A stretch of DNA of 47,188 nt from Salisapilia sapeloensis CBS 127946 (Eukaryota > Protista > Oomycota). This document shows, one piece after another, positions 19,592 through 28,947 of this stretch (positions are counted from its first letter, which is position 1; each line of letters opens with the position of its first letter). The stretch spans positions 1 to 47,188 of the forward strand of contig JAADVB010000147.1 in NCBI GenBank assembly GCA_023334545.1. The letters are read 5' to 3'. The translations under genes were made by a program, and so were the position numbers. Under the pieces are notes generated by a model. The model did not search any database and was not told the origin of the DNA. It worked only from the letters and a program-made list of their open reading frames with translations.

Positions 19592-20516
19592 ATGATCGAC
19601 TTCATGCGGCTACTCGTTGCATTTGTGGTCCTTGGCATCTCGTTTGTCACTTGGAAATGGATGCAATCGAAATCTACCGCGGCAACTACATTTACTAGTA
19701 CTTCGTCTGGAAAAAAGAAAAATCGGAAGAAGCGAAAGAGTAAGAAAGAAAGAACGCCGGAGCGCTATACCGGCGACGTTGTCGGTCAAAACACACCAGC
19801 CCAGTCATCTCCACCTCAGCAAAGCGATCTACCGGAAGAGGAGAGTGATAATGATAGCGATAGTGATGACGATGGGCGCAAGAAAGCGTCCAAAGTGCTC
19901 TCAGAACGTCGCTTTAAGCCAAAAGCCGTCGGTGGCGCTTCGCAAGTACCGACGTCCGACCCCATTCCAAAGTACACACTTGGTCAGAGAGTATATGCAG
20001 ACTACCAGAATGGTCCACACAAGTTCCCAGGTATCATCCATGAGGTACGTGAGCATGAACTAGAAAAGATATATCTAGAAAGGATCATTCTTAGACTCGA
20101 AACGCTAGGTGCGAAGAGATAACAAGTATCACATCCAGTTTGATGACGGTGGCTTCGAGTACAATGTGCCGTATTCTAACATTCAAATACCAGACGATCA
20201 ACCTGCCAAAGAGGTAGTCGAGACCAAGCAAGAGGAAACGAAACAAGAAGAGAGATTGGTCGAACCAGAGGTCGATCATGACGACGATGGATGGGAAATC
20301 GTCGGCCCAACCAAGCGGAACAAGCCTAAGAGCGCACCAGAGCCAGCTTCCAACGACGGACTGACGAAGAGGCAACGGGAGAGTCGTCGGAAGAAGGAGA
20401 GACAGAAAGAGATTCGAGACATGGTGCGAGAGCGAGCGCAGGAAGATGGATTACACGCTCGATGGGGTGGATCCAACCAACGTTATCGCTATGTACCTCC
20501 TCCACCTACAAATTAG
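19592..20516 (+). CDS. N-terminally membrane-anchored Tudor-like domain protein, 2 exons, 286 aa
   Basis: Exons 19592-20044 and 20109-20516; 64-nt intron GTACGT..TAG. TM segment LLVAFVVLGISFVTW; polybasic KKKNRKKRKSKK; spliced Tudor-like YTLGQRVYADYQNGPHKFPGIIHE/VRRDNKYHIQFDDGGFEYNVP. Confidence 0.85.
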
Positions 20517-21287: not shown

Positions 21288-24200
21288 ATGACATCACCGA
21301 CTTTGGAAATGGACCCATCGCTGGAGAATGCATCAGTAGCTCAGCTGGAGGAACGACTGGTGGAGACGACTAAAGCTAAAGAAGCGAATGCCGTACGTAT
21401 GCCCTTATGCCAATATATCATACTCTACTTTTCCATCATTAAATCATCTTTCATGATGACCATACATGCACCTATCATATCGTCTCTCCCTATACTTATG
21501 CTTATAATACTAGACGGTTGGTAAGCAACTGGATGAAAAGCTTCGTTCTGCCTTTAAGAATGCACCTCGTCGTCCGAATATGACGGCTGAATTGATCGAT
21601 CGAACGATGGAAGAACTAGAGTTACGTCGATCCACAACGTCCATGCCACTAGCAGATGAAAATCGGATCTTGAGAGAGCTCCAGCAGCTTGGTGAAAAGC
21701 GAACGCAGCTTGAGACTTTTAACAACTTCCAATCATGGGTCGACAAGACGAAAACCGAGCGTCAAGAGCGATTCGCCAAGCACAAGGAGCTAGAAACGCA
21801 GATCCGACAGCTCCAAAATGCTAAACGTCGAGCAACGCTGGCCCAAGCTTTGGGTCAAAGTACGTCGGATCTCGTCACCATCCAAGTGTCTCTTCCGAAA
21901 GCTCGCATCGGGAATGTCGTCGGCCGAGGCTATGCCAACTTGCGCCAGTTGGAAAGTGACCATCAAGCCATCATCGAAATCGATGACACTGCTCTCGTCG
22001 CGAATATTGTAAGCGTCGTCTCACAGGCAGAGCTGGCTAAAGCAGCGATCGAGGACATTACGCTCGCGACTAACGTCGTCGTTGGCCTCCACCCGGATAC
22101 GATGAAACTCCTGTTGTCTCAAAAGTCCAAGTTACTACATGAGCTAGAGCAGTCACTTCATCTCCATCTCGACGTGAATAAGAGCGATGGCATTCTATCC
22201 GCGAGCGCTTCGCCTCGAAAGGAGAAACAACTTCGATTGGCACTAGATCAAGTTGCAGCAAAGAAAGAAGACATTGGGTTACCAGCAGAAGTGGTCCCGA
22301 AACTCATCGGTCGAAAGGGTGAGACCGTGAACAAGTTGATGGAAGAGTCTGATTGTCTCATTGATATTGATAAAGTGACCAACTCTGTCCGTCTATGCGG
22401 TTCCAAAGCGAATGTAGCAAAAGCAAAGACGTTCGTGCTAGACTTGGTCGAGGAGTTTTCCACTCGGACTGACGTCGTTCGTCCAAGCGACTTAGACGTC
22501 TTCCCAGACGACACCTACGAAGTCTATAAATTCACGTTCTTTGCCGAGTTCCTCATGGCAGACAAAGCTGCTCAACTAAAGAAACTTCGATCGACCGTCG
22601 GTGAAGCTCGTGTGAGTGTATCGAAAGATGAGAAGAAGATCGTTGCAACTGGTACCAAGGCACAGTTGACGACATTCCGCCCGACACTCAAGACGTTCAT
22701 CACTTCTTTCGAAGAAAAGCATTTCGTTCATCAAGTCTCGGACGGTCGGATCTTGAGTCTCATCATCGGTCGTAAAGGTGCAAAGATTAAAGAGCTAGAG
22801 AAGGAAGCCATGTCTGCTGGTGGTCACGTACGTATTGACGTCGATGGGTTATATGTATGTGTCTACGGCGAACCAAAGGACGTACTTGAAAGCACGAAAA
22901 ACCAGATCGAACGTATTGATGCCACGAACCAGCGGTCCTACTACTCCACCTGTCAATACCTCGTCACAGTCCTCCTCAACTCGAAACGTGAGAAGCTGCA
23001 GGATATCGAGTCGGAATCCGGATGTAAGCTGCAGCTACCACCGCCGCCATCCGGCGGTAGGGACAGTGTCGACGCCAGTGCTCGTGTTAAGATCACATTG
23101 ACCGGTACGATCGAAGCGATTGCTGAGGCCAAGCAGCTTCTCACTGCACTTGACGACGCTCATCTCGTGCATCACGTTCCACTAGACGCAGACGAAGTTC
23201 CAATTGTCATTGGACAGAAAGGCAAGACAGTGAGTGAGTTGGAAAGCAAGAGTGGTGCCAAAGTACGCGTCCTAAGGAATAAGGAAGGAGAAAAGGGTGC
23301 TGAATTAGAGCTGATCGGTACCAAGGAACAGCTAGAGGTCGTGCAAGCATCTCTTGACACGCTGCTGCAGACACAGAATCGCTCTCTCCTTCAGTTCGAT
23401 GCCTTCACCGTCGGTTGTTTGATTGGAAAGAAAGGAGAGCGGATCAAGGCGTTACGTGAGAAGCATCCAGAGGCTACACTCGACGCTTTCCCTGTACGAG
23501 GTCAAGTCCGTGTCAAAGCATCTAGTCAGGAAGCCATGAATATCTGTCTGGACGATGTCATGCAGACGTTACGTGAATCGAGCGTTGTCGAGACGATTCA
23601 CGCCAGTGACAGCGTTAACTTCAAGCAGCTTATCGACAAATACGAAGCGCTGGAAGCTCGTCTGCATGAGCTCGAGGCACAAGGGGGTGAAGGCATGCGT
23701 GTGAATTTCTTGGAGGATGGCAAGATCGTCAAGCTGCGAGGTTGTGCCTTAGGTATTGGTCCGTTGAAAAAGTTCCTCGAGATGCTGAATGAAGCAGATG
23801 ACGTTCTGATGGAAAGCATGAAACTTCCGTCTCTGTCCACAGCAAAGGTGCTCATGACAGGAGAGAAAGAGGATGCTCCAGCGAAACTAAATGAGAACGC
23901 CTTGCGTATCTGTAAGCAAACCAAGTGCGAGATCCGTGTGAAGCAGAGTGGAGAGGATGCAGAGGTGGTGATTGAAGGCAGCAGCGTTGCCAATGTCTAT
24001 AACGCGAGAGCAGAAGTGGAGAAGCTACTCCAGTTCTACTTTAGCGATCGAATTGCTCTACTTGTAGACCTTCCACCTGCCGCTATTCCACGTCTCTTTG
24101 AGATGGCACCATCACTTCGATCCAAATGGAACGCCGTGCTATCTCTTCCGACTAAGACGAGTATGAAAGTCTTTACAAAGTCCAAGGAAGACACGGAAGC

Positions 24201-25242
24201 AGCCGCAAACGTCTTGCGTTCGGAATTGGCAACGTGGAAGCAGCAGCATGTTCAAGTGCCAGTTCCATCCTGGGTGGTCCCGCTGCTAGTCGGTAAGAAT
24301 GGAGAGTCTATTCGGAAGCTTGCGGCAACTGCTGAAGGAGCCAAGTTGGACGTGAGTCCTTTTGACAATCATAAAGACCGCTTCATCACGGTGCATGCAC
24401 GAGACGATGATGTCTTGCAACGTGCTGTCGACCTCGTCAAGTCTGAGATCGACAAGCATACGGAGCTAGCATCAAGTGTGGAGGCGAACTCGGATGTCGC
24501 GGACGTCCTCCTGAACGTCCGAAAGGAAGCGACTTCATCCGGATTACAGTTCCATGTACTGGACAAAGAGGCTGGTAAAGAAATTGTTGTGTATGGCACA
24601 GACTTTGAAAGTCGCGAACGTATTGTTGAGAAACTGGAGCACTTGCGTGACACGACACAAGTCCGAGTGATTGAATTGCCTGATTCGAATGCGTACAAGT
24701 CGATTGTTGGAGCGCTCATTGGTAAGAGTGGCACACATATCAAGGCACTGCAAAAACAATTCCCAGACGTGACAATCGACATCCTTCGAGATGAACGTCG
24801 CATTACGCTTAAAGGTCCTACTGAAAGCGTGGATCAAGTGAAGAGTGTCATGGAAGATAAGATTCAAGAGTTGTTGCCGAGACTGGATGAGCAAGAGCAG
24901 CAGGAACAAGCTCCAGTCAGTCCCACGGAGTCAAAGACGAAGGTCGAGAAAGACCTCAAGGATGAAGATAAGGAGAACGAAGTCGATACGTCGGTTTCGA
25001 GTGGAAACCAAAACCAGTCGGTACCAAAGCCTACGGTTGTTGGCGGCACTCCGTCCATGAGTTTACCCAAAATGTCCAAGAAGCAGCGGCAACGCATGAG
25101 AAAGCGTGCAGAGAAGACGAACGAAGTCTTGTCTATGATCATGGGAGACGACAAAACAGAGAATCCTTCCTCATCCACAAAAGAGTCGAATGGAAATGGT
25201 AGCTACTATCATTCTTCTAGTGGTTATTCCCTTCGATTGTAG
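21288..25242 (+). CDS. Multi-KH-domain RNA-binding protein (vigilin/Scp160-like), 2 exons, ~1277 aa
   Basis: Exons 21288-21392 and 21514-25242 (121-nt intron GTACGT..TAG). Seven GxxG KH loops (VGRGY, IGRKG x2, IGQKG, IGKKG, VGKNG, IGKSG) plus degenerate KH units; N-terminal coiled coil. Confidence 0.9.
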
Positions 25243-25361
25243 AAGGGATGATGCCTACGACGCCATAATGCTCAGTTCTACGTTTATGATTTACTACAGT
25301 ATTGTAATAAATCACAGTTGATAAGTTTCCATCTCTACGTTATCATATTATTCATGGACAC

Positions 25362-28300
25362 TTATCGAAATGCTGGTCGACTTTTTGGTGTGCGACTTCG
25401 GCTTCGTGATTCCGAAGGTGATTGATATTTGCTCGATTGACTCGCAGCCGTCTCTCGAGCGACACCAGAGTTTATCCGAGATGGAATCGCAGATAAAGTT
25501 TTCGTTGATGTCTTTGAATCGACAGACCGACTACTTTTTGTCTTGGAGCTGTTGGATGGAGTACGGTTTTGGTAGCTCCGAGATGGACCTGCAGAGGCAC
25601 CACGTGGCTGTCGCTTCACAGCGGATTTGCGAGGAGCTACATCTTCATATTCTTTGCTTTTTCGTCGACGTTGCTCTAACTGGGCGGATGCGTGTGGATA
25701 GATTTGTGCACCTACTGGAGATGGAGGAAAGGATTGATCCAAGTGCTCCATGTATCGCGAATTCCCGGGAAAGTTAAGCGGCTCTGATTCATCTATTGTC
25801 GGGTGGGCTGCTAGTTGCAAAGGTGCTCGGTATAATTCAGTTCCGTACCGCTTCTCCATGGATTCTAGCTCACGCTCCCAGCTAATGGATCCAATCCTTC
25901 GGTTCATTTGCTTCTGCTTACGTTCTCTTAAAGCACTACTTGAAAAGGTAAGTAGCTGACCCGTGGTCAAGCTACCATTACCACTCAATTGTTTATTTTT
26001 GGCATAGCGACTCATAAATCCTTGCAGCGTACCATCTCGCTTTCCATGGAAACCATTTACTGGATCTCGGACAGCAGCGATAATCTGTTGCATCCAGTGC
26101 ATCGTTGCAAGTGAAGTTTGACTAGATAAACTACTGCCTGGTGCTGCTTTTGGATCACTGTCAAACGCTTCAGGAAAAGTTCCAATGGCGAGAAACTTGG
26201 CCGAAGCTTTCATTGTTTCCTGGAGCAGAACGGTGAGCTTGGAACTATGATATCGAACAAACGTTGTCTCCTGGAAACGTATGTCTGCAAGCACCGAAAT
26301 AAGTGACTTGATCCCTTGCTCCATCGTTGTGACCACTTTTGACTCATCGGATCTCTGCCACTCCAAGTCGGGAGTTGGTTCTGTACGACTCTGGGCAGCT
26401 AACTCCACGATCTACAATGTAGACAAGCTTAGTCACATGAAAAGAAAGCTACCTTACATATCCGCTTACCTGAAGCTTGGATTTGACTGGCACTGCGCCA
26501 ACTAGTCGATTCTCGTAGGTAATATCAAGTGTGATTACACGATGTGCCAAGTGGTGGTTCATCGGAAAAGATTGAGTCGCCTGGAGTGTGTCATACCCAC
26601 TGCGTAAGACCAGAAGCACTTCCTCGAGGTTCGATACTTCGAGCATGGCAAACTTACAAGTAGATGTACCTCCTCTATTCTCGTACGCCTGCACCATACC
26701 TTGGGTTCCGAGAAGGTCATAAATGACTTCGTCGTACACCGCCATGAAACTCACCGTTACCGCAGCACGATGGGCATGTCCATTGGTTTCCACAATATCA
26801 AAAAGTTGATGCATAATAAGCTCAACAGGCGATATTTCGTCCGAGTGAGTAGCGAGAGAGGCAAGTGGCGGATCAGAATGGAGTTGTAGCGGTAACATTC
26901 CATCAAAAACCACAATGCATCCATTGCTTCCATCTATTATGCTTTGTAGTAGCGGAGTGATCGACTCATCACTTCTCCATGGTCGTGACCGGTCCGAATA
27001 CACTGCATCAAACTGAACATGAATCGGTTCAGTATTTGGCTGCGTACGCAAAAGTACCTCTCCTGTTGAGTAATTGGCTCGTAGCACAGGACATTTTACT
27101 TGGCCTGCGTTGTCATACGCATGTAAAGGATGCGCTGCACTTCGAATTTGACATAGAACAATAGCATTGTGCTTAGATTCCCAAAGCTGGTCATGAAGAT
27201 GCTTCCGAGCCAAGTCACTGGATGTTAATGCGTCCTTCAAGGGCTGGCGTTCACTATGTGCGGCTGTAGCATACTGTTTAGATCGACTCAAAAGCTGGAG
27301 AACTGGTTGGCGAAGATGCCTGATAAACTGTTGGAAATCTTCACGAAGAGATAAGATAGGAGCTCGTACTGTGGCTAACGATCTACGAACATTTTGTATA
27401 CGAAATAGAGCATCACAAGCAACGGCATTTAGTTTCCGCTGGCGATACTGATGACGTTGGATAGATGCACTTTGCGATTGTAAATGCTCCCGGGCGTCAT
27501 TCCCATACGTAAGTAGAGCTTTTGCCTCGGCCGTCTTTGCAGCCACTCGACCTTTAAGCTGATGCACCTCTCTTTGGAGGCAGTCACGTTCGTCTTTTGT
27601 GTTTTCCAGCTCCACTGCATCTGCTTCATACCGTTGTCTCAAATCTTTTATCTTATCTTTTAACAAAGCATTCTCCTTTTCCAAGGAAGTGTTCTCTGAC
27701 TGCGCTTCCGTCCATTTGTCTAGCACTTCTTTGAAATGCATACCTCGCTTCCCAATTTCCGAATTAAGATGTGTTGCATCCTCTTTCATTAATCTATTCT
27801 CTTGCTGTAACATAGCGTTTTGATGTGCTAACTCTTTCAATCGAACTTCAACTTGTGCGAAAGTTGATTGGGACTCATTCTCTGTAGCTCGTAGCATGTT
27901 TATTTCTTCATCCTGCTTGGCTATAGCTGCATTAAGCTCCATGATACGCTTCGATTGTTGATACGCTTCTGCAACAGCTTTATCGCGTAACTCGCTCATC
28001 ACCTGCAGCTCCTTCCATACCGAAGCCGTAGCAGTGACATCGGATGGCAGCTCTTGGCGACCTTCCTTGGGTGATTCGTTTGAAATTGTCACTTCGACGT
28101 CTAATTCACGAGTTTCTATGGGAGTTGGTTCAAAATATTTCTCCTCTGGAGTATCTCCTCTGTCATCTACATGTTCGTGCTGCTGAAATAACGTCTCCTC
28201 TTGAACTTCAGTCTGATCTTCCAAAACAGTCGTATCGGCCACTGCATCGTTGTCCATCTTCTCAATAAAATCTTCAGTCAGCTCGACACTATTTCCAACT

Positions 28301-28488
28301 TCTTGTTCAGCTTTATCATCACCAGGGCTGGCATAGAAATCATCCTCATACAATTCGACCTTCAATTCATCTTCATTATCAACGAGGTCCAAGCCCATGT
28401 GTTCTTCTTCTGGAGTTTCATCGTATATGTCTTCATCATCGTACAAGTTGGGTTCATCCATGCTCACAGCACGTTCGGTTTTATTCAT
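25362..28488 (-). CDS. Kinesin-fold protein with degenerate ATPase motifs (kinesin-14-like layout), 2 exons, ~1022 aa
   Basis: Exons 28488-26470 and 26411-25362 (58-nt intron GTAAGC..TAG). Acidic N-terminus, long coiled coil, then a motor-homology region: KHNAIVLCQIR, QFDAVY, SKLQ/IVELAA, VRYHSSKLTVLLQETM. Basic S/R-rich tail. Confidence 0.85.
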
Positions 28489-28947
28489 GTGCTCGCATTC
28501 ACTAAGGTATCCGTTTCATTTTCTACAGGACGATTACCATCGCGATACATGTATTTGAAGTTGTATGGAAGTGGGTCCAAATGACCCTATACTATCCATT
28601 TCTAAAGGTTTAAATGCATTTATAGAGTTATTTACATTATTTTCAACCAATTAAAGCTCTTCATTTGGCGCGAACGCTACTGAGTCTCATTCGTCCTTGG
28701 AATACTTTCATAGCTCATACACTCAATAATTAGTTAAGAATACAATTAATATCCTATTCTCTTCATAGGTAGACTCTTTACTTCTATTAATTTAAAAAAA
28801 ACTTGGCGGTCAACACTTAAAAAAAATGTGCTCAGTATACCTCTTCAAGATCGAACAGGACGAGAGTCTCACATTTCTTAATAGACATCTATCGCCACAA
28901 GTGCGTTCGCACATCCCACCCATCGCGTGCTGATACAAGTTGAAACG

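What the first reader, a model, noticed from the sequence alone, without database searches (positions are those of the whole stretch)
25362..28488. Catalytically dead kinesin: a possible oomycete analogue of Vik1/Cik1
Seen: after a long coiled coil the kinesin fold is traceable, but all nucleotide motifs are lost. P-loop GxxGxGKT reads GSNGCIVVFDGMLPL (~26885-26935), switch I NxxSSRSH reads MNHHLAH (~26545-26570), and switch II DLAGSE reads ELAAQS (~26390-26411). The microtubule-binding loop12/helix5 region survives (VRYHSSKLTVLLQE). The ORF and intron are intact. Known: yeast Vik1/Cik1 are non-catalytic motor-homology partners of kinesin-14 Kar3. Inference: an independently evolved pseudo-motor that heterodimerises with an active kinesin or cross-links microtubules. 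A TTTGGCGC (E2F-like) site at 28664-28671 lies upstream but is statistically weak.
Basis: partly seen in the sequence, partly recalled or inferred. Interest (0 to 1): 0.72.

Follow-up and report, generated by a model that had tools for sequence, protein, structure and literature searches.

The report
Conserved dead kinesin-14 of oomycetes
This water-mould gene encodes a microtubule-motor look-alike that keeps the motor's shape and its track-binding face but has lost every residue needed to burn ATP. The same dead form has been kept under selection across oomycetes, yet no paper I could find describes it.

Summary
A two-exon minus-strand gene (28488-26470 and 26411-25362, with a 58-nt GT-AG intron) encodes about 1022 aa. 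The parts are an acidic N-terminus, a roughly 270-residue helical stalk, a kinesin-14-type neck and motor, conserved post-motor helices and a basic Ser/Thr-rich tail. Pfam Kinesin scores above its cut-off, and the best solved relatives are Ncd and Kar3, neck included. A model of the Lagenidium orthologue matches them at Z 27. The P-loop, switch I, switch II and RxRP motifs are all replaced. The alpha4-L12-alpha5 microtubule face is the family's best-conserved block.

It is not a decaying pseudogene. About 45 orthologues, from Phytophthora to Saprolegnia and Albugo, lack the same motifs. They form one clade (99% support) on a long stem among kinesin-14s. dN/dS is 0.14-0.22 for the whole gene and 0.07-0.11 for the neck and motor.

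The family has no detectable homology to Vik1/Cik1, so the dead motor arose independently. Pairing with an active kinesin-14 remains untested. The E2F-like site is not conserved.

Databases call these proteins KIN-14Q, di-glucose binding protein or P-loop NTPase. The scan also noted another "dead kinesin" elsewhere in this genome (s1-314473); its relation to this gene is unknown.

The parts
25362..28488 (-). Whole gene: exon 1 28488-26470 (673 codons), intron 26469-26412, exon 2 26411-25362 (349 codons plus stop). The product is about 1022 aa.
26412..26469 (-). 58-nt phase-0 GT-AG intron between beta7 (KSKLQ) and the former switch II (IVELAAQS). If it were retained, the frame would stop after 6 codons.
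   Evidence: The junction matches the family consensus. The P. capsici orthologue has no intron.
28297..28488 (-). Disordered acidic N-terminus. Residues 1-64 have pLDDT below 50. Residues 1-150 have pI 4.05 and net charge -42.
27532..28029 (-). Stalk helix 1, residues 154-319, with heptad periodicity.
   Evidence: AF2 on exon 1. Heptad score 0.64 against shuffled 0.49 +/- 0.018.
27178..27498 (-). Stalk helix 2 and neck, residues 331-437. It ends in the kinesin-14-type junction ARKHLHDQLWESKHNAIVLCQIRS (27139-27210) and holds three family-conserved prolines (P377, P395, P416).
26470..27177 (-). Motor-homology core, exon 1 part (residues 438-673). It contains the degenerate P-loop site at 26872-26931 and the degenerate switch I site at 26542-26562.
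26157..26411 (-). Motor-homology core, exon 2 part: degenerate switch II (26388-26411), alpha4 (26274-26324), L12/alpha5 FVRYHSSKLTVLLQE (26217-26261) and beta8 (26181-26201).
25812..26156 (-). Family-specific post-motor region with the conserved blocks DGTLQGFMSRYAK (25998-26036), FSS (25920-25946) and SWERELESMEKRYG (25836-25883).
   Evidence: (helices at pLDDT 65-75 in the orthologue model)
25365..25811 (-). Basic Ser/Thr/Pro-rich tail (pI 10.8, net +15). It carries ARETAAS (25440-25460; family RRETASS) and the C-terminal RPAFR (25365-25379; family PF[RK]-COOH).

Best explanation
The gene encodes a member of an oomycete-wide family of kinesin-14-derived pseudo-motors.

Shown here: the protein keeps the kinesin-14 neck helix and motor fold. 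All four nucleotide-binding signatures are replaced: RxRP, the Walker-A P-loop, switch I SSRSH and switch II DxxGxE. The replacement is shared by every family member, so it dates to before the split of Saprolegniales, Albuginales and Peronosporales. The gene is single-copy, vertically inherited and under purifying selection.

Inferred: it cannot bind or hydrolyse ATP. It acts as a non-catalytic, nucleotide-independent microtubule-binding head through the conserved alpha4-L12-alpha5 face. It is held on a dimerising helical stalk of about 270 residues. The basic, phosphorylatable C-terminal tail is assumed to help as a second, electrostatic microtubule contact or regulatory handle.

The working model I commit to is a passive 'foothold' or tether head on spindle or basal-body microtubules. 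It would act either paired with a catalytic kinesin-14 (Kar3-Vik1/Cik1 logic) or as a homodimeric cross-linker or brake. The evidence does not separate these two modes. I put the heterodimer mode at about 0.3, the homodimeric cross-linker or brake at about 0.3, and a non-microtubule scaffold role at about 0.12.
For: - Fold: Pfam Kinesin is above cut-off. phmmer against PDB gives Ncd at 6e-9 with the neck included.
- Structure: the AF2 model of the Lagenidium orthologue has pLDDT 83 and pTM 0.77, with a 97-residue helix running into beta1. Foldseek's top hits are Kar3 4etp_A and Ncd at E 1e-21. VIA gives Z 27 with model residues 45-465 aligned to Ncd 292-671.
- The window's own exon 1 folds as disordered N-terminus, two long helices and a partial kinesin core.
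- Motif loss is family-wide. None of P0001-P0016, P0019-21 or P0034 has GxxxxGK[ST], SSRSH or DLAGSE. Nearly all other hits do.
- Family limits: the profile search of 1.84 billion representatives shows a gap between members (263-595 bits) and active kinesins (131 bits or less). Of the 133 non-family hits, 82 carry the strict kinesin-14 neck signature.
- Monophyly has 99% SH-aLRT support, with a stem of 3.48 changes per site.
- Taxa: 17 named Phytophthora species, Nothophytophthora, Plasmopara, Pythium, Globisporangium, Lagenidium, Saprolegnia, Thraustotheca, Aphanomyces and Albugo.
- dN/dS in Aphanomyces is 0.217 overall and 0.069 for neck plus motor. In Phytophthora it is 0.139 overall, 0.035 for the stalk and 0.110 for the motor.
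- The best-conserved family blocks are HSSKLTVLLQ in alpha5 (0.91) and KSKLQIVEL in beta7 (0.86). The P-loop block drops to 0.50, against 0.92 in active kinesins.
- The KH-protein neighbour is conserved in three peronosporalean loci.
Against: - No biochemical data exist. Loss of ATP binding and retention of microtubule binding are both inferred from sequence.
- In alpha5 the Arg of YRNSKLT is His in this family, with an Arg shifted two positions upstream. KAC1/2 show that a kinesin-14-like domain can lose microtubule binding (PMC3402901).
- Three conserved prolines sit in the neck-proximal helix, which is unusual for a canonical coiled coil.
- No partner was identified, and no stalk paralogue was detected in active kinesins.
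- Expression in this organism rests on one 166-nt low-depth contig.
- The window's spliced protein was never searched or folded as one chain. Exons were handled apart, and the full motor model is of a 43%-identical orthologue.
Confidence: 0.85

Rival explanations
1. Vik1/Cik1-type partner. The protein heterodimerises through its stalk and neck with a catalytic oomycete kinesin-14. Its dead head would act as the microtubule 'foothold' that makes the pair processive or targets it.
For: - The architecture matches: a coiled-coil stalk, a kinesin-14 neck helix running straight into a nucleotide-site-free motor-homology head.
- The stalk is under very strong constraint in Phytophthora (dN/dS 0.035, lower than the head), as expected for a specific pairing surface.
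- The Kar3-Vik1/Cik1 precedent shows that a non-catalytic head enables processive movement (PMC4338441).
- The scan notes at least one active kinesin-14 gene elsewhere in this genome (s1-288995; I did not check it).
Against: - No partner was identified.
- No detectable stalk similarity to any active kinesin.
- In Aphanomyces the stalk is less constrained than the head (0.206 against 0.069).
- Unlike Vik1/Cik1, the head is followed by about 270 conserved residues.
Confidence: 0.3
2. Homodimeric passive microtubule cross-linker, brake or MAP. Two dead heads plus basic tails would bind microtubules statically, for example in the spindle or at the basal body and flagellar rootlets. The acidic N-terminus would serve as an auto-inhibitory or cargo end.
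For: - The stalk has heptad periodicity.
- The microtubule face is conserved.
- The tail is basic (pI 10.8-11.8) and the N-terminus acidic across the family.
- No stalk-matched partner was found.
- No named hit came from the non-flagellate downy mildews, while zoospore-forming taxa all have the gene. Kinesin genes are known to be depleted in those mildews (PMC6264045).
Against: - The downy-mildew absence is only a lack of named hits in a word-limited search, not a tested absence.
- PITG_11652 is not in the published P. infestans flagellar list. That list could not contain oomycete-only genes.
- No localisation data exist.
Confidence: 0.3
3. Repurposed scaffold that no longer binds microtubules, like plant KAC1/2. 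The kinesin fold would serve only as a protein-interaction platform, using the family-specific conserved blocks.
For: - New conserved blocks occur where active kinesin-14s are variable: LRANYSTGEL, SDRAREW and VVLEVQNAEEALLVL, plus the post-motor helices, RRETASS and PF[RK]-COOH.
- KAC1/2 are a precedent (PMC3402901).
Against: L12/alpha5 and alpha4 are the family's best-conserved segments and still resemble the active consensus. That would be unexpected if tubulin contact had been abandoned.
Confidence: 0.12
4. Decaying pseudogene or mis-assembled gene model.
For: The motifs are lost and evolution is fast. Identity between orders is only 25-43%, and Pfam scores are 45-105 bits.
Against: - ORFs of similar length are intact in about 45 orthologues.
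- dN/dS is 0.07-0.22 in two lineages.
- The splice junction is exact.
- The C-terminal end motif is conserved.
Confidence: 0.02

Closest known systems
Vik1 and Cik1 (Saccharomyces), non-catalytic partners of the kinesin-14 Kar3
   Same: Both have a coiled-coil stalk followed by a globular head with the kinesin fold and no nucleotide-binding site. The design would allow a dead 'foothold' head next to a live one (PMC4338441).
   Different: - There is no detectable homology. Sequence and fold searches return Kar3 and Ncd chains, not Vik1.
- This family still scores as Pfam Kinesin and keeps the kinesin-14 neck-core junction.
- It is restricted to oomycetes.
- About 270 residues with conserved motifs follow the head.
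- Heterodimerisation is unproven.
Catalytic kinesin-14 motors (Ncd, Kar3, KIFC1/3, plant KIN-14)
   Same: - These are the nearest relatives by sequence, profile and structure (Z 27).
- The neck helix abuts beta1.
- alpha4-L12-alpha5 is conserved.
- The family branches among kinesin-14s.
   Different: - RxRP, the P-loop, switch I and switch II are all replaced.
- The N-terminus is acidic instead of a basic microtubule-binding tail.
- A basic tail lies C-terminal of the head.
- The stem branch is very long, at 3.48 changes per site.
Plant KAC1/KAC2 (kinesin-like proteins for actin-based chloroplast movement)
   Same: Both are kinesin-14-derived proteins that no longer act as microtubule motors (PMC3402901).
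   Different: KAC proteins are reported to lack microtubule binding and to act with actin. This family keeps the tubulin-facing elements best of all. The lineages and origins are unrelated.
Other degenerate kinesins (KIF26A/B of kinesin-11, Costal2, yeast Smy1); from my own knowledge, not tested here
   Same: They have a kinesin-like head with impaired or absent ATPase, used as a static binder or scaffold.
   Different: They descend from N-terminal-motor families, not from kinesin-14. None has this family's stalk, post-motor blocks or PF[RK] end.

Membership tests
Kinesin superfamily (Pfam PF00225 fold) | Motor-domain fold recognised by profile and by structure | tested here: met
   Pfam scores 44.7 bits on exon 1 against a cut-off of 29.3. 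Orthologues score 62-105 bits. The orthologue model matches Ncd/Kar3 at Z 27, and Foldseek gives E 1e-21.
Catalytically competent kinesin | Walker-A P-loop GxxxxGK[ST] | tested here: not met
   The site reads DGMLPLQLHSD in the window. No family member matches the regex.
Catalytically competent kinesin | Switch I NxxSSRSH and switch II DxxGxE | tested here: not met
   Switch I reads MNHHLAH, where only the final His is kept. Switch II reads ELAAQS. This holds across the family.
Catalytically competent kinesin | RxRP adenine-contact motif after beta1 | tested here: not met
   The window has CQIRS and the family has CQxxN, against CRVRP in active kinesins.
Kinesin-14 | Neck coiled coil directly N-terminal of the core, with the conserved junction (R/K)xLHNxxxELKGNIRV | tested here: met
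   ARKHLHDQLWESKHNAIVLCQ aligns to the Ncd neck. The model helix runs into beta1 and superposes on Ncd 292-347. The junction is degenerate: Gly becomes Lys, Arg or His, and IRV becomes ALL.
Kinesin-14 | Phylogenetic placement inside the kinesin-14 clade | tested here: inconclusive
   The family branches among active kinesin-14s, and 82 of 133 top profile hits carry the strict neck signature. However, the tree held no other kinesin families as outgroup, and the stem is very long.
Kinesin-14 | Minus-end-directed ATP-driven motility | not testable with these tools
   This needs a motility assay. It is predicted absent because the nucleotide site is gone.
Vik1/Cik1 family | Homology to Vik1/Cik1 | tested here: not met
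   No Vik1 or Cik1 chain appears among the PDB sequence hits or among the best 50 Foldseek or VIA matches. The family is confined to oomycetes.
Vik1/Cik1 family | Motor-homology head with kinesin fold and no nucleotide site | tested here: met
Vik1/Cik1 family | Obligate coiled-coil heterodimer with a catalytic kinesin-14 | not testable with these tools
   There was no multimer prediction and no access to the genome's other kinesins.
Vik1/Cik1 family | Nucleotide-independent microtubule binding by the dead head | not testable with these tools
   Only indirect evidence is available: alpha4-L12-alpha5 is the best-conserved block.

The most novel reading that the evidence does not exclude
Oomycetes independently invented a Kar3-Vik1-type two-headed motor. 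This dead kinesin-14 would be the obligate non-catalytic partner of a live kinesin-14. It would supply the foothold head, and through its conserved post-motor helices, RRETASS site and PF[RK]-COOH end it would target the pair to the spindle or the basal bodies. That would be a second, convergent origin of the live-head/dead-head motor design. Its sequence intermediates would still be readable, because the dead head remains recognisably kinesin-14.
Probability: 0.25. Interest if true: 0.8.

Novelty: new variant of a known kind. Interest (0 to 1): 0.58.

Why it matters
- Pseudo-motors are rare. The Kar3-Vik1/Cik1 pair is the only well-understood case in which a dead kinesin-like head is built into a working motor.
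- This family is an independent origin that still aligns to live kinesin-14s. One can therefore read, residue by residue, what is discarded (the whole nucleotide site) and what is kept or gained. Kept or gained are the tubulin face, the neck junction, new surface blocks and a C-terminal end motif.
- The gene is conserved in all major oomycete orders, including crop and fish pathogens, and no member was found outside oomycetes. That makes it a lineage-specific cytoskeletal component worth a knock-down or localisation study.
- Current database names are misleading and should be corrected. These names are KIN-14Q, di-glucose binding protein with kinesin motor domain, and P-loop containing NTP hydrolase.

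Tried and rejected
- Pseudogene reading: rejected by dN/dS and by about 45 intact orthologues.
- E2F-site reading: the motif is present, with 4 copies in the window against 0.97 expected. It is absent within 500 nt upstream of six orthologues, so I dropped it.
- RNA evidence: only one run held any of the stretch. It gave a 166-nt exon 2 contig at depth 4.8, and nothing crossed the intron.
- My first dN/dS attempt by tblastx covered only 355 codons and gave unusable control values. A protein-guided codon mapping replaced it.
- Literature searches found nothing on this family. The queries covered oomycete kinesins with P-loop loss, pseudokinesin terms, Phytophthora kinesin-14 and PITG_11652.
- The P. 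infestans flagellar-proteome supplements do not list PITG_11652. This is uninformative, because that list was built from pan-eukaryotic orthologues.
- The findings look-up by sequence was blank, which means nothing according to the operators.
- Window organism: no protein is more than 43% identical. The tree places it only weakly near a metagenome sequence and Saprolegniales. The organism remains unidentified.
Exons were searched by reference apart, and the complete head was modelled on the Lagenidium orthologue P0001:330-900.
Full report
**Gene model**

Two long minus-strand ORFs, 26449..28488 and 25362..26408, lie head to tail. Between them is a 58-nt intron, 26469..26412, with GTAAGC...TGTAG ends and phase 0. 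Splicing joins ...KSKLQ to IVELAAQS.... That junction reproduces the consensus KSKLQIVELA of the orthologues with no gap. An unspliced message would stop after six codons. The product is 673 + 349 = 1022 residues and ends in RPAFR.

Each exon was used by reference. The complete head was modelled on an orthologue. This is a limit of the work.

- Pfam Kinesin (PF00225) scores 44.7 bits on exon 1 against a cut-off of 29.3, and 17.4 bits on exon 2. The kinesin-14-typical Microtub_bd model is just under its cut-off.
- phmmer against all PDB chains puts Drosophila Ncd first (6e-9), then Kar3. The alignment starts in the neck coiled coil: query 389-596 against Ncd 12-208.
- Exon 2 aligns weakly to the alpha4-alpha5 region of KIF3 and kinesin-1.
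  - 26872-26931 reads GSNGCIVVFDGMLPLQLHSD where Ncd has DGYNICIFAYGQTGSGKT.
  - 26542-26562 reads MNHHLAH for NxxSSRSH.
  - 26388-26411 reads IVELAAQS for LVDLAGSE.
  - The RxRP after beta1 reads CQIRS.
  - FVRYHSSKLTVLLQE (26217-26261) keeps the L12/alpha5 signature HVPYRNSKLTxLLQD.

**Structure**

An AlphaFold2 model of the Lagenidium orthologue (P0001:330-900) was built on a 50-row alignment of family members and active kinesin-14s.

- It has mean pLDDT 83 and pTM 0.77. A 97-residue helix runs directly into beta1 of a complete kinesin core.
- Foldseek ranks Kar3 (4etp_A) and Ncd first, at E about 1e-21.
- VIA-align gives Z 27.0-27.3 with model residues 45-465 laid on Ncd 292-671, so neck and head are both matched.
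- Vik1 is not among the 50 best rows in either list.

The window's own exon 1 product was folded separately (pLDDT 71). It shows a disordered acidic N-terminus, a short helix at 65-109, a 166-residue helix at 154-319, a hinge at 320-330, and a 107-residue helix at 331-437 entering the partial core. The stalk has heptad periodicity well above shuffles, 0.64 against 0.49 +/- 0.018. It also holds three prolines (377, 395, 416) that are conserved in the family. I cannot explain these.

**A conserved family, not a one-off**

Word-based searches found orthologues in these taxa:
- Lagenidium, Nothophytophthora and Plasmopara halstedii
- 17 named Phytophthora species
- Pythium and Globisporangium

A profile of neck plus head was run against 1.84 billion representative proteins. 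It shows a sharp gap.
- Twelve full-length representatives score 263-595 bits, along with some fragments.
- Active kinesins follow at 131 bits or less.

By source names, the twelve include Pythium oligandrum, Plasmopara, Saprolegnia diclina, Thraustotheca clavata and Aphanomyces. A very divergent Albugo candida cluster scores 96 bits.

None of these proteins has a P-loop, SSRSH or DLAGSE. Nearly all the other listed hits have all three. The aligned motif sites are degenerate in every member.

Of the 133 non-family hits, 82 carry the strict kinesin-14 neck signature GNIRVxCRxRP, and many more carry near variants. The named ones are plant KIN-14R, KIFC2/C3 and a yeast Kar3-like protein.

In a maximum-likelihood tree, the 16 family rows form one clade with 99% SH-aLRT support. 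The stem is 3.48 changes per site among active kinesin-14s, and the internal order largely follows oomycete taxonomy. Because the tree contained no other kinesin families, I treat the kinesin-14 parentage as well supported by neck, profile and fold, but not formally proven by phylogeny.

No member from outside oomycetes was seen. The unnamed Logan and metagenome members nest inside the oomycete clade.

The window's protein is at most 43% identical to any database protein. Its organism is therefore not represented in the databases searched.

**Selection**

| Comparison | Region | dN/dS |
|---|---|---|
| Aphanomyces euteiches vs A. cochlioides (865 codons) | whole gene | 0.217 |
| | neck + head | 0.069 |
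| | stalk | 0.206 |
| Phytophthora capsici vs P. citrophthora (975 codons, dS 0.45) | whole gene | 0.139 |
| | stalk | 0.035 |
| | neck + head | 0.110 |
| | post-motor region | 0.230 |
| | tail | 0.50 |
| | adjacent KH-protein gene (control) | 0.040 |

The dead head is therefore under strong purifying selection in two orders.

Column conservation shows what is being kept:
- The family's best blocks are HSSKLTVLLQ in alpha5 (0.91) and KSKLQIVEL in beta7 (0.86).
- The P-loop block falls to 0.50, against 0.92 in active kinesins.
- New conserved blocks appear where active kinesin-14s vary: LRANYSTGEL, SDRAREW and VVLEVQNAEEALLVL.
- After the head come DRSLEGFMNR, FSS, W..EL..M.KRYG, RRETASSALKK and an extreme C-terminal [KR]x(x)PF[RK].
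- That C-terminal end is shared by Albugo, Saprolegnia, Aphanomyces and the peronosporaleans. The window has RPAFR.

Charge is inverted relative to classical kinesin-14s. The N-terminus is acidic (pI 4.05, net -42 over 150 residues). The tail after the head is basic and Ser/Thr/Pro-rich (pI 10.8).

**Context**

- A vigilin-like protein gene with multiple KH domains (21580-25242, Pfam KH_1) abuts the gene.
- A KH gene also abuts the orthologue in P. capsici, P. citrophthora and a Logan contig, although the orientation differs.
- In Aphanomyces the neighbour is a Tudor-domain gene. Window 19886-20489 is weakly similar to it (tblastx 1e-9).
- This microsynteny supports orthology.

**Expression**

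Expression evidence in this organism is thin.
- One small run holds a 3.9-kb contig of the KH gene that ends at 25285.
- The same run holds a 166-nt contig inside exon 2 at depth 4.8.
- Nothing crosses the intron.
- The E2F-like TTTGGCGC at 28664-28671 is real but is absent upstream of six orthologues.

**Mechanism**

Shown: the fold, the loss of every nucleotide-site signature, the antiquity of that loss, and selection on the head, stalk and end motifs.

Inferred:
- There is no ATP binding or hydrolysis.
- The retained alpha4-L12-alpha5 face gives nucleotide-independent microtubule binding.
- The stalk mediates dimerisation.
- The basic tail acts as a second microtubule contact or regulatory handle.

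- The very low stalk dN/dS in Phytophthora favours a specific pairing surface.
- The failure to find any stalk-related active kinesin and the weaker stalk constraint in Aphanomyces argue for caution.
- Plant KAC1/2 show that a kinesin-14-like head can also abandon microtubules (PMC3402901), so that rival is kept at low weight.
- That search listed no named hit from the non-flagellate downy mildews, which are known to have lost many kinesin genes (PMC6264045).
- That link is only a lead. The search is word-limited, and absence was not tested.

**Novelty**

I found no paper on this family. Databases label members as hypothetical, KIN-14Q, di-glucose binding protein with kinesin motor domain, or P-loop NTP hydrolase. 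All of these names are transferred by similarity. The last is wrong, because the P-loop is absent.

The kind of protein, a dead kinesin-like head, is known from Vik1/Cik1, KAC and others. This is an independent, lineage-wide variant with its own architecture.

The scan's notes list another "catalytically dead kinesin" on a different piece of the same genome (s1-314473). I could not see its sequence, so it may be a paralogue, a second family or a duplicate.

Noticed in passing
window 25365-25379; family C-termini (P0001-P0015, P0034): Almost every full-length family member ends in [KR]x(x)PF[RK]-COOH. This includes Albugo, Saprolegnia and Aphanomyces. The window ends in RPAFR. I know of no reader domain for such an end motif.
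   Followed up: partly
window 27241-27360 (residues P377, P395, P416 of exon 1): Three prolines conserved across the family lie 18-21 residues apart inside the neck-proximal helix. AlphaFold draws that helix as continuous. This is odd for a canonical coiled coil.
   Followed up: partly
window 25482-25493: An SxIP-like SAIP sits in the basic Ser-rich tail, resembling an EB1-binding motif. It is not conserved in the orthologues shown, so it may be chance.
   Followed up: partly
window 21580-25285 and 25362: The convergent KH/vigilin gene's transcript contig ends at 25285. That is 77 nt from the stop codon of the dead kinesin on the other strand, so the two 3' ends nearly touch. The KH-kinesin adjacency is conserved in Phytophthora, but there the two genes are in tandem orientation.
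   Followed up: partly
window 19886-20489; L003 8845-9978; L004 8980-10135: The Tudor-domain gene that abuts the pseudo-kinesin in Aphanomyces has a weak homologue (tblastx 1e-9) two genes away in the window. This is a trace of older synteny.
   Followed up: partly
P0004 and P0190 (Nothophytophthora sp. Chile5): Two family copies of 964 and 954 aa come from one assembly. They may be a duplication or two haplotypes. All other named genomes showed a single locus, apart from Pythium insidiosum, whose two entries carry different assembly prefixes.
   Followed up: no
P0017, P0018, P0022, P0023: Several top active-kinesin hits carry two to seven repeated P-loop, switch I or switch II motifs in one predicted protein. 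They are either tandem motor repeats or assembly or gene-model artefacts.
   Followed up: no
one search hit list: No named hit came from Peronospora, Hyaloperonospora or Bremia, the non-flagellate downy mildews. Zoospore-forming Plasmopara halstedii and all the Phytophthora species listed have the gene.
   Followed up: no
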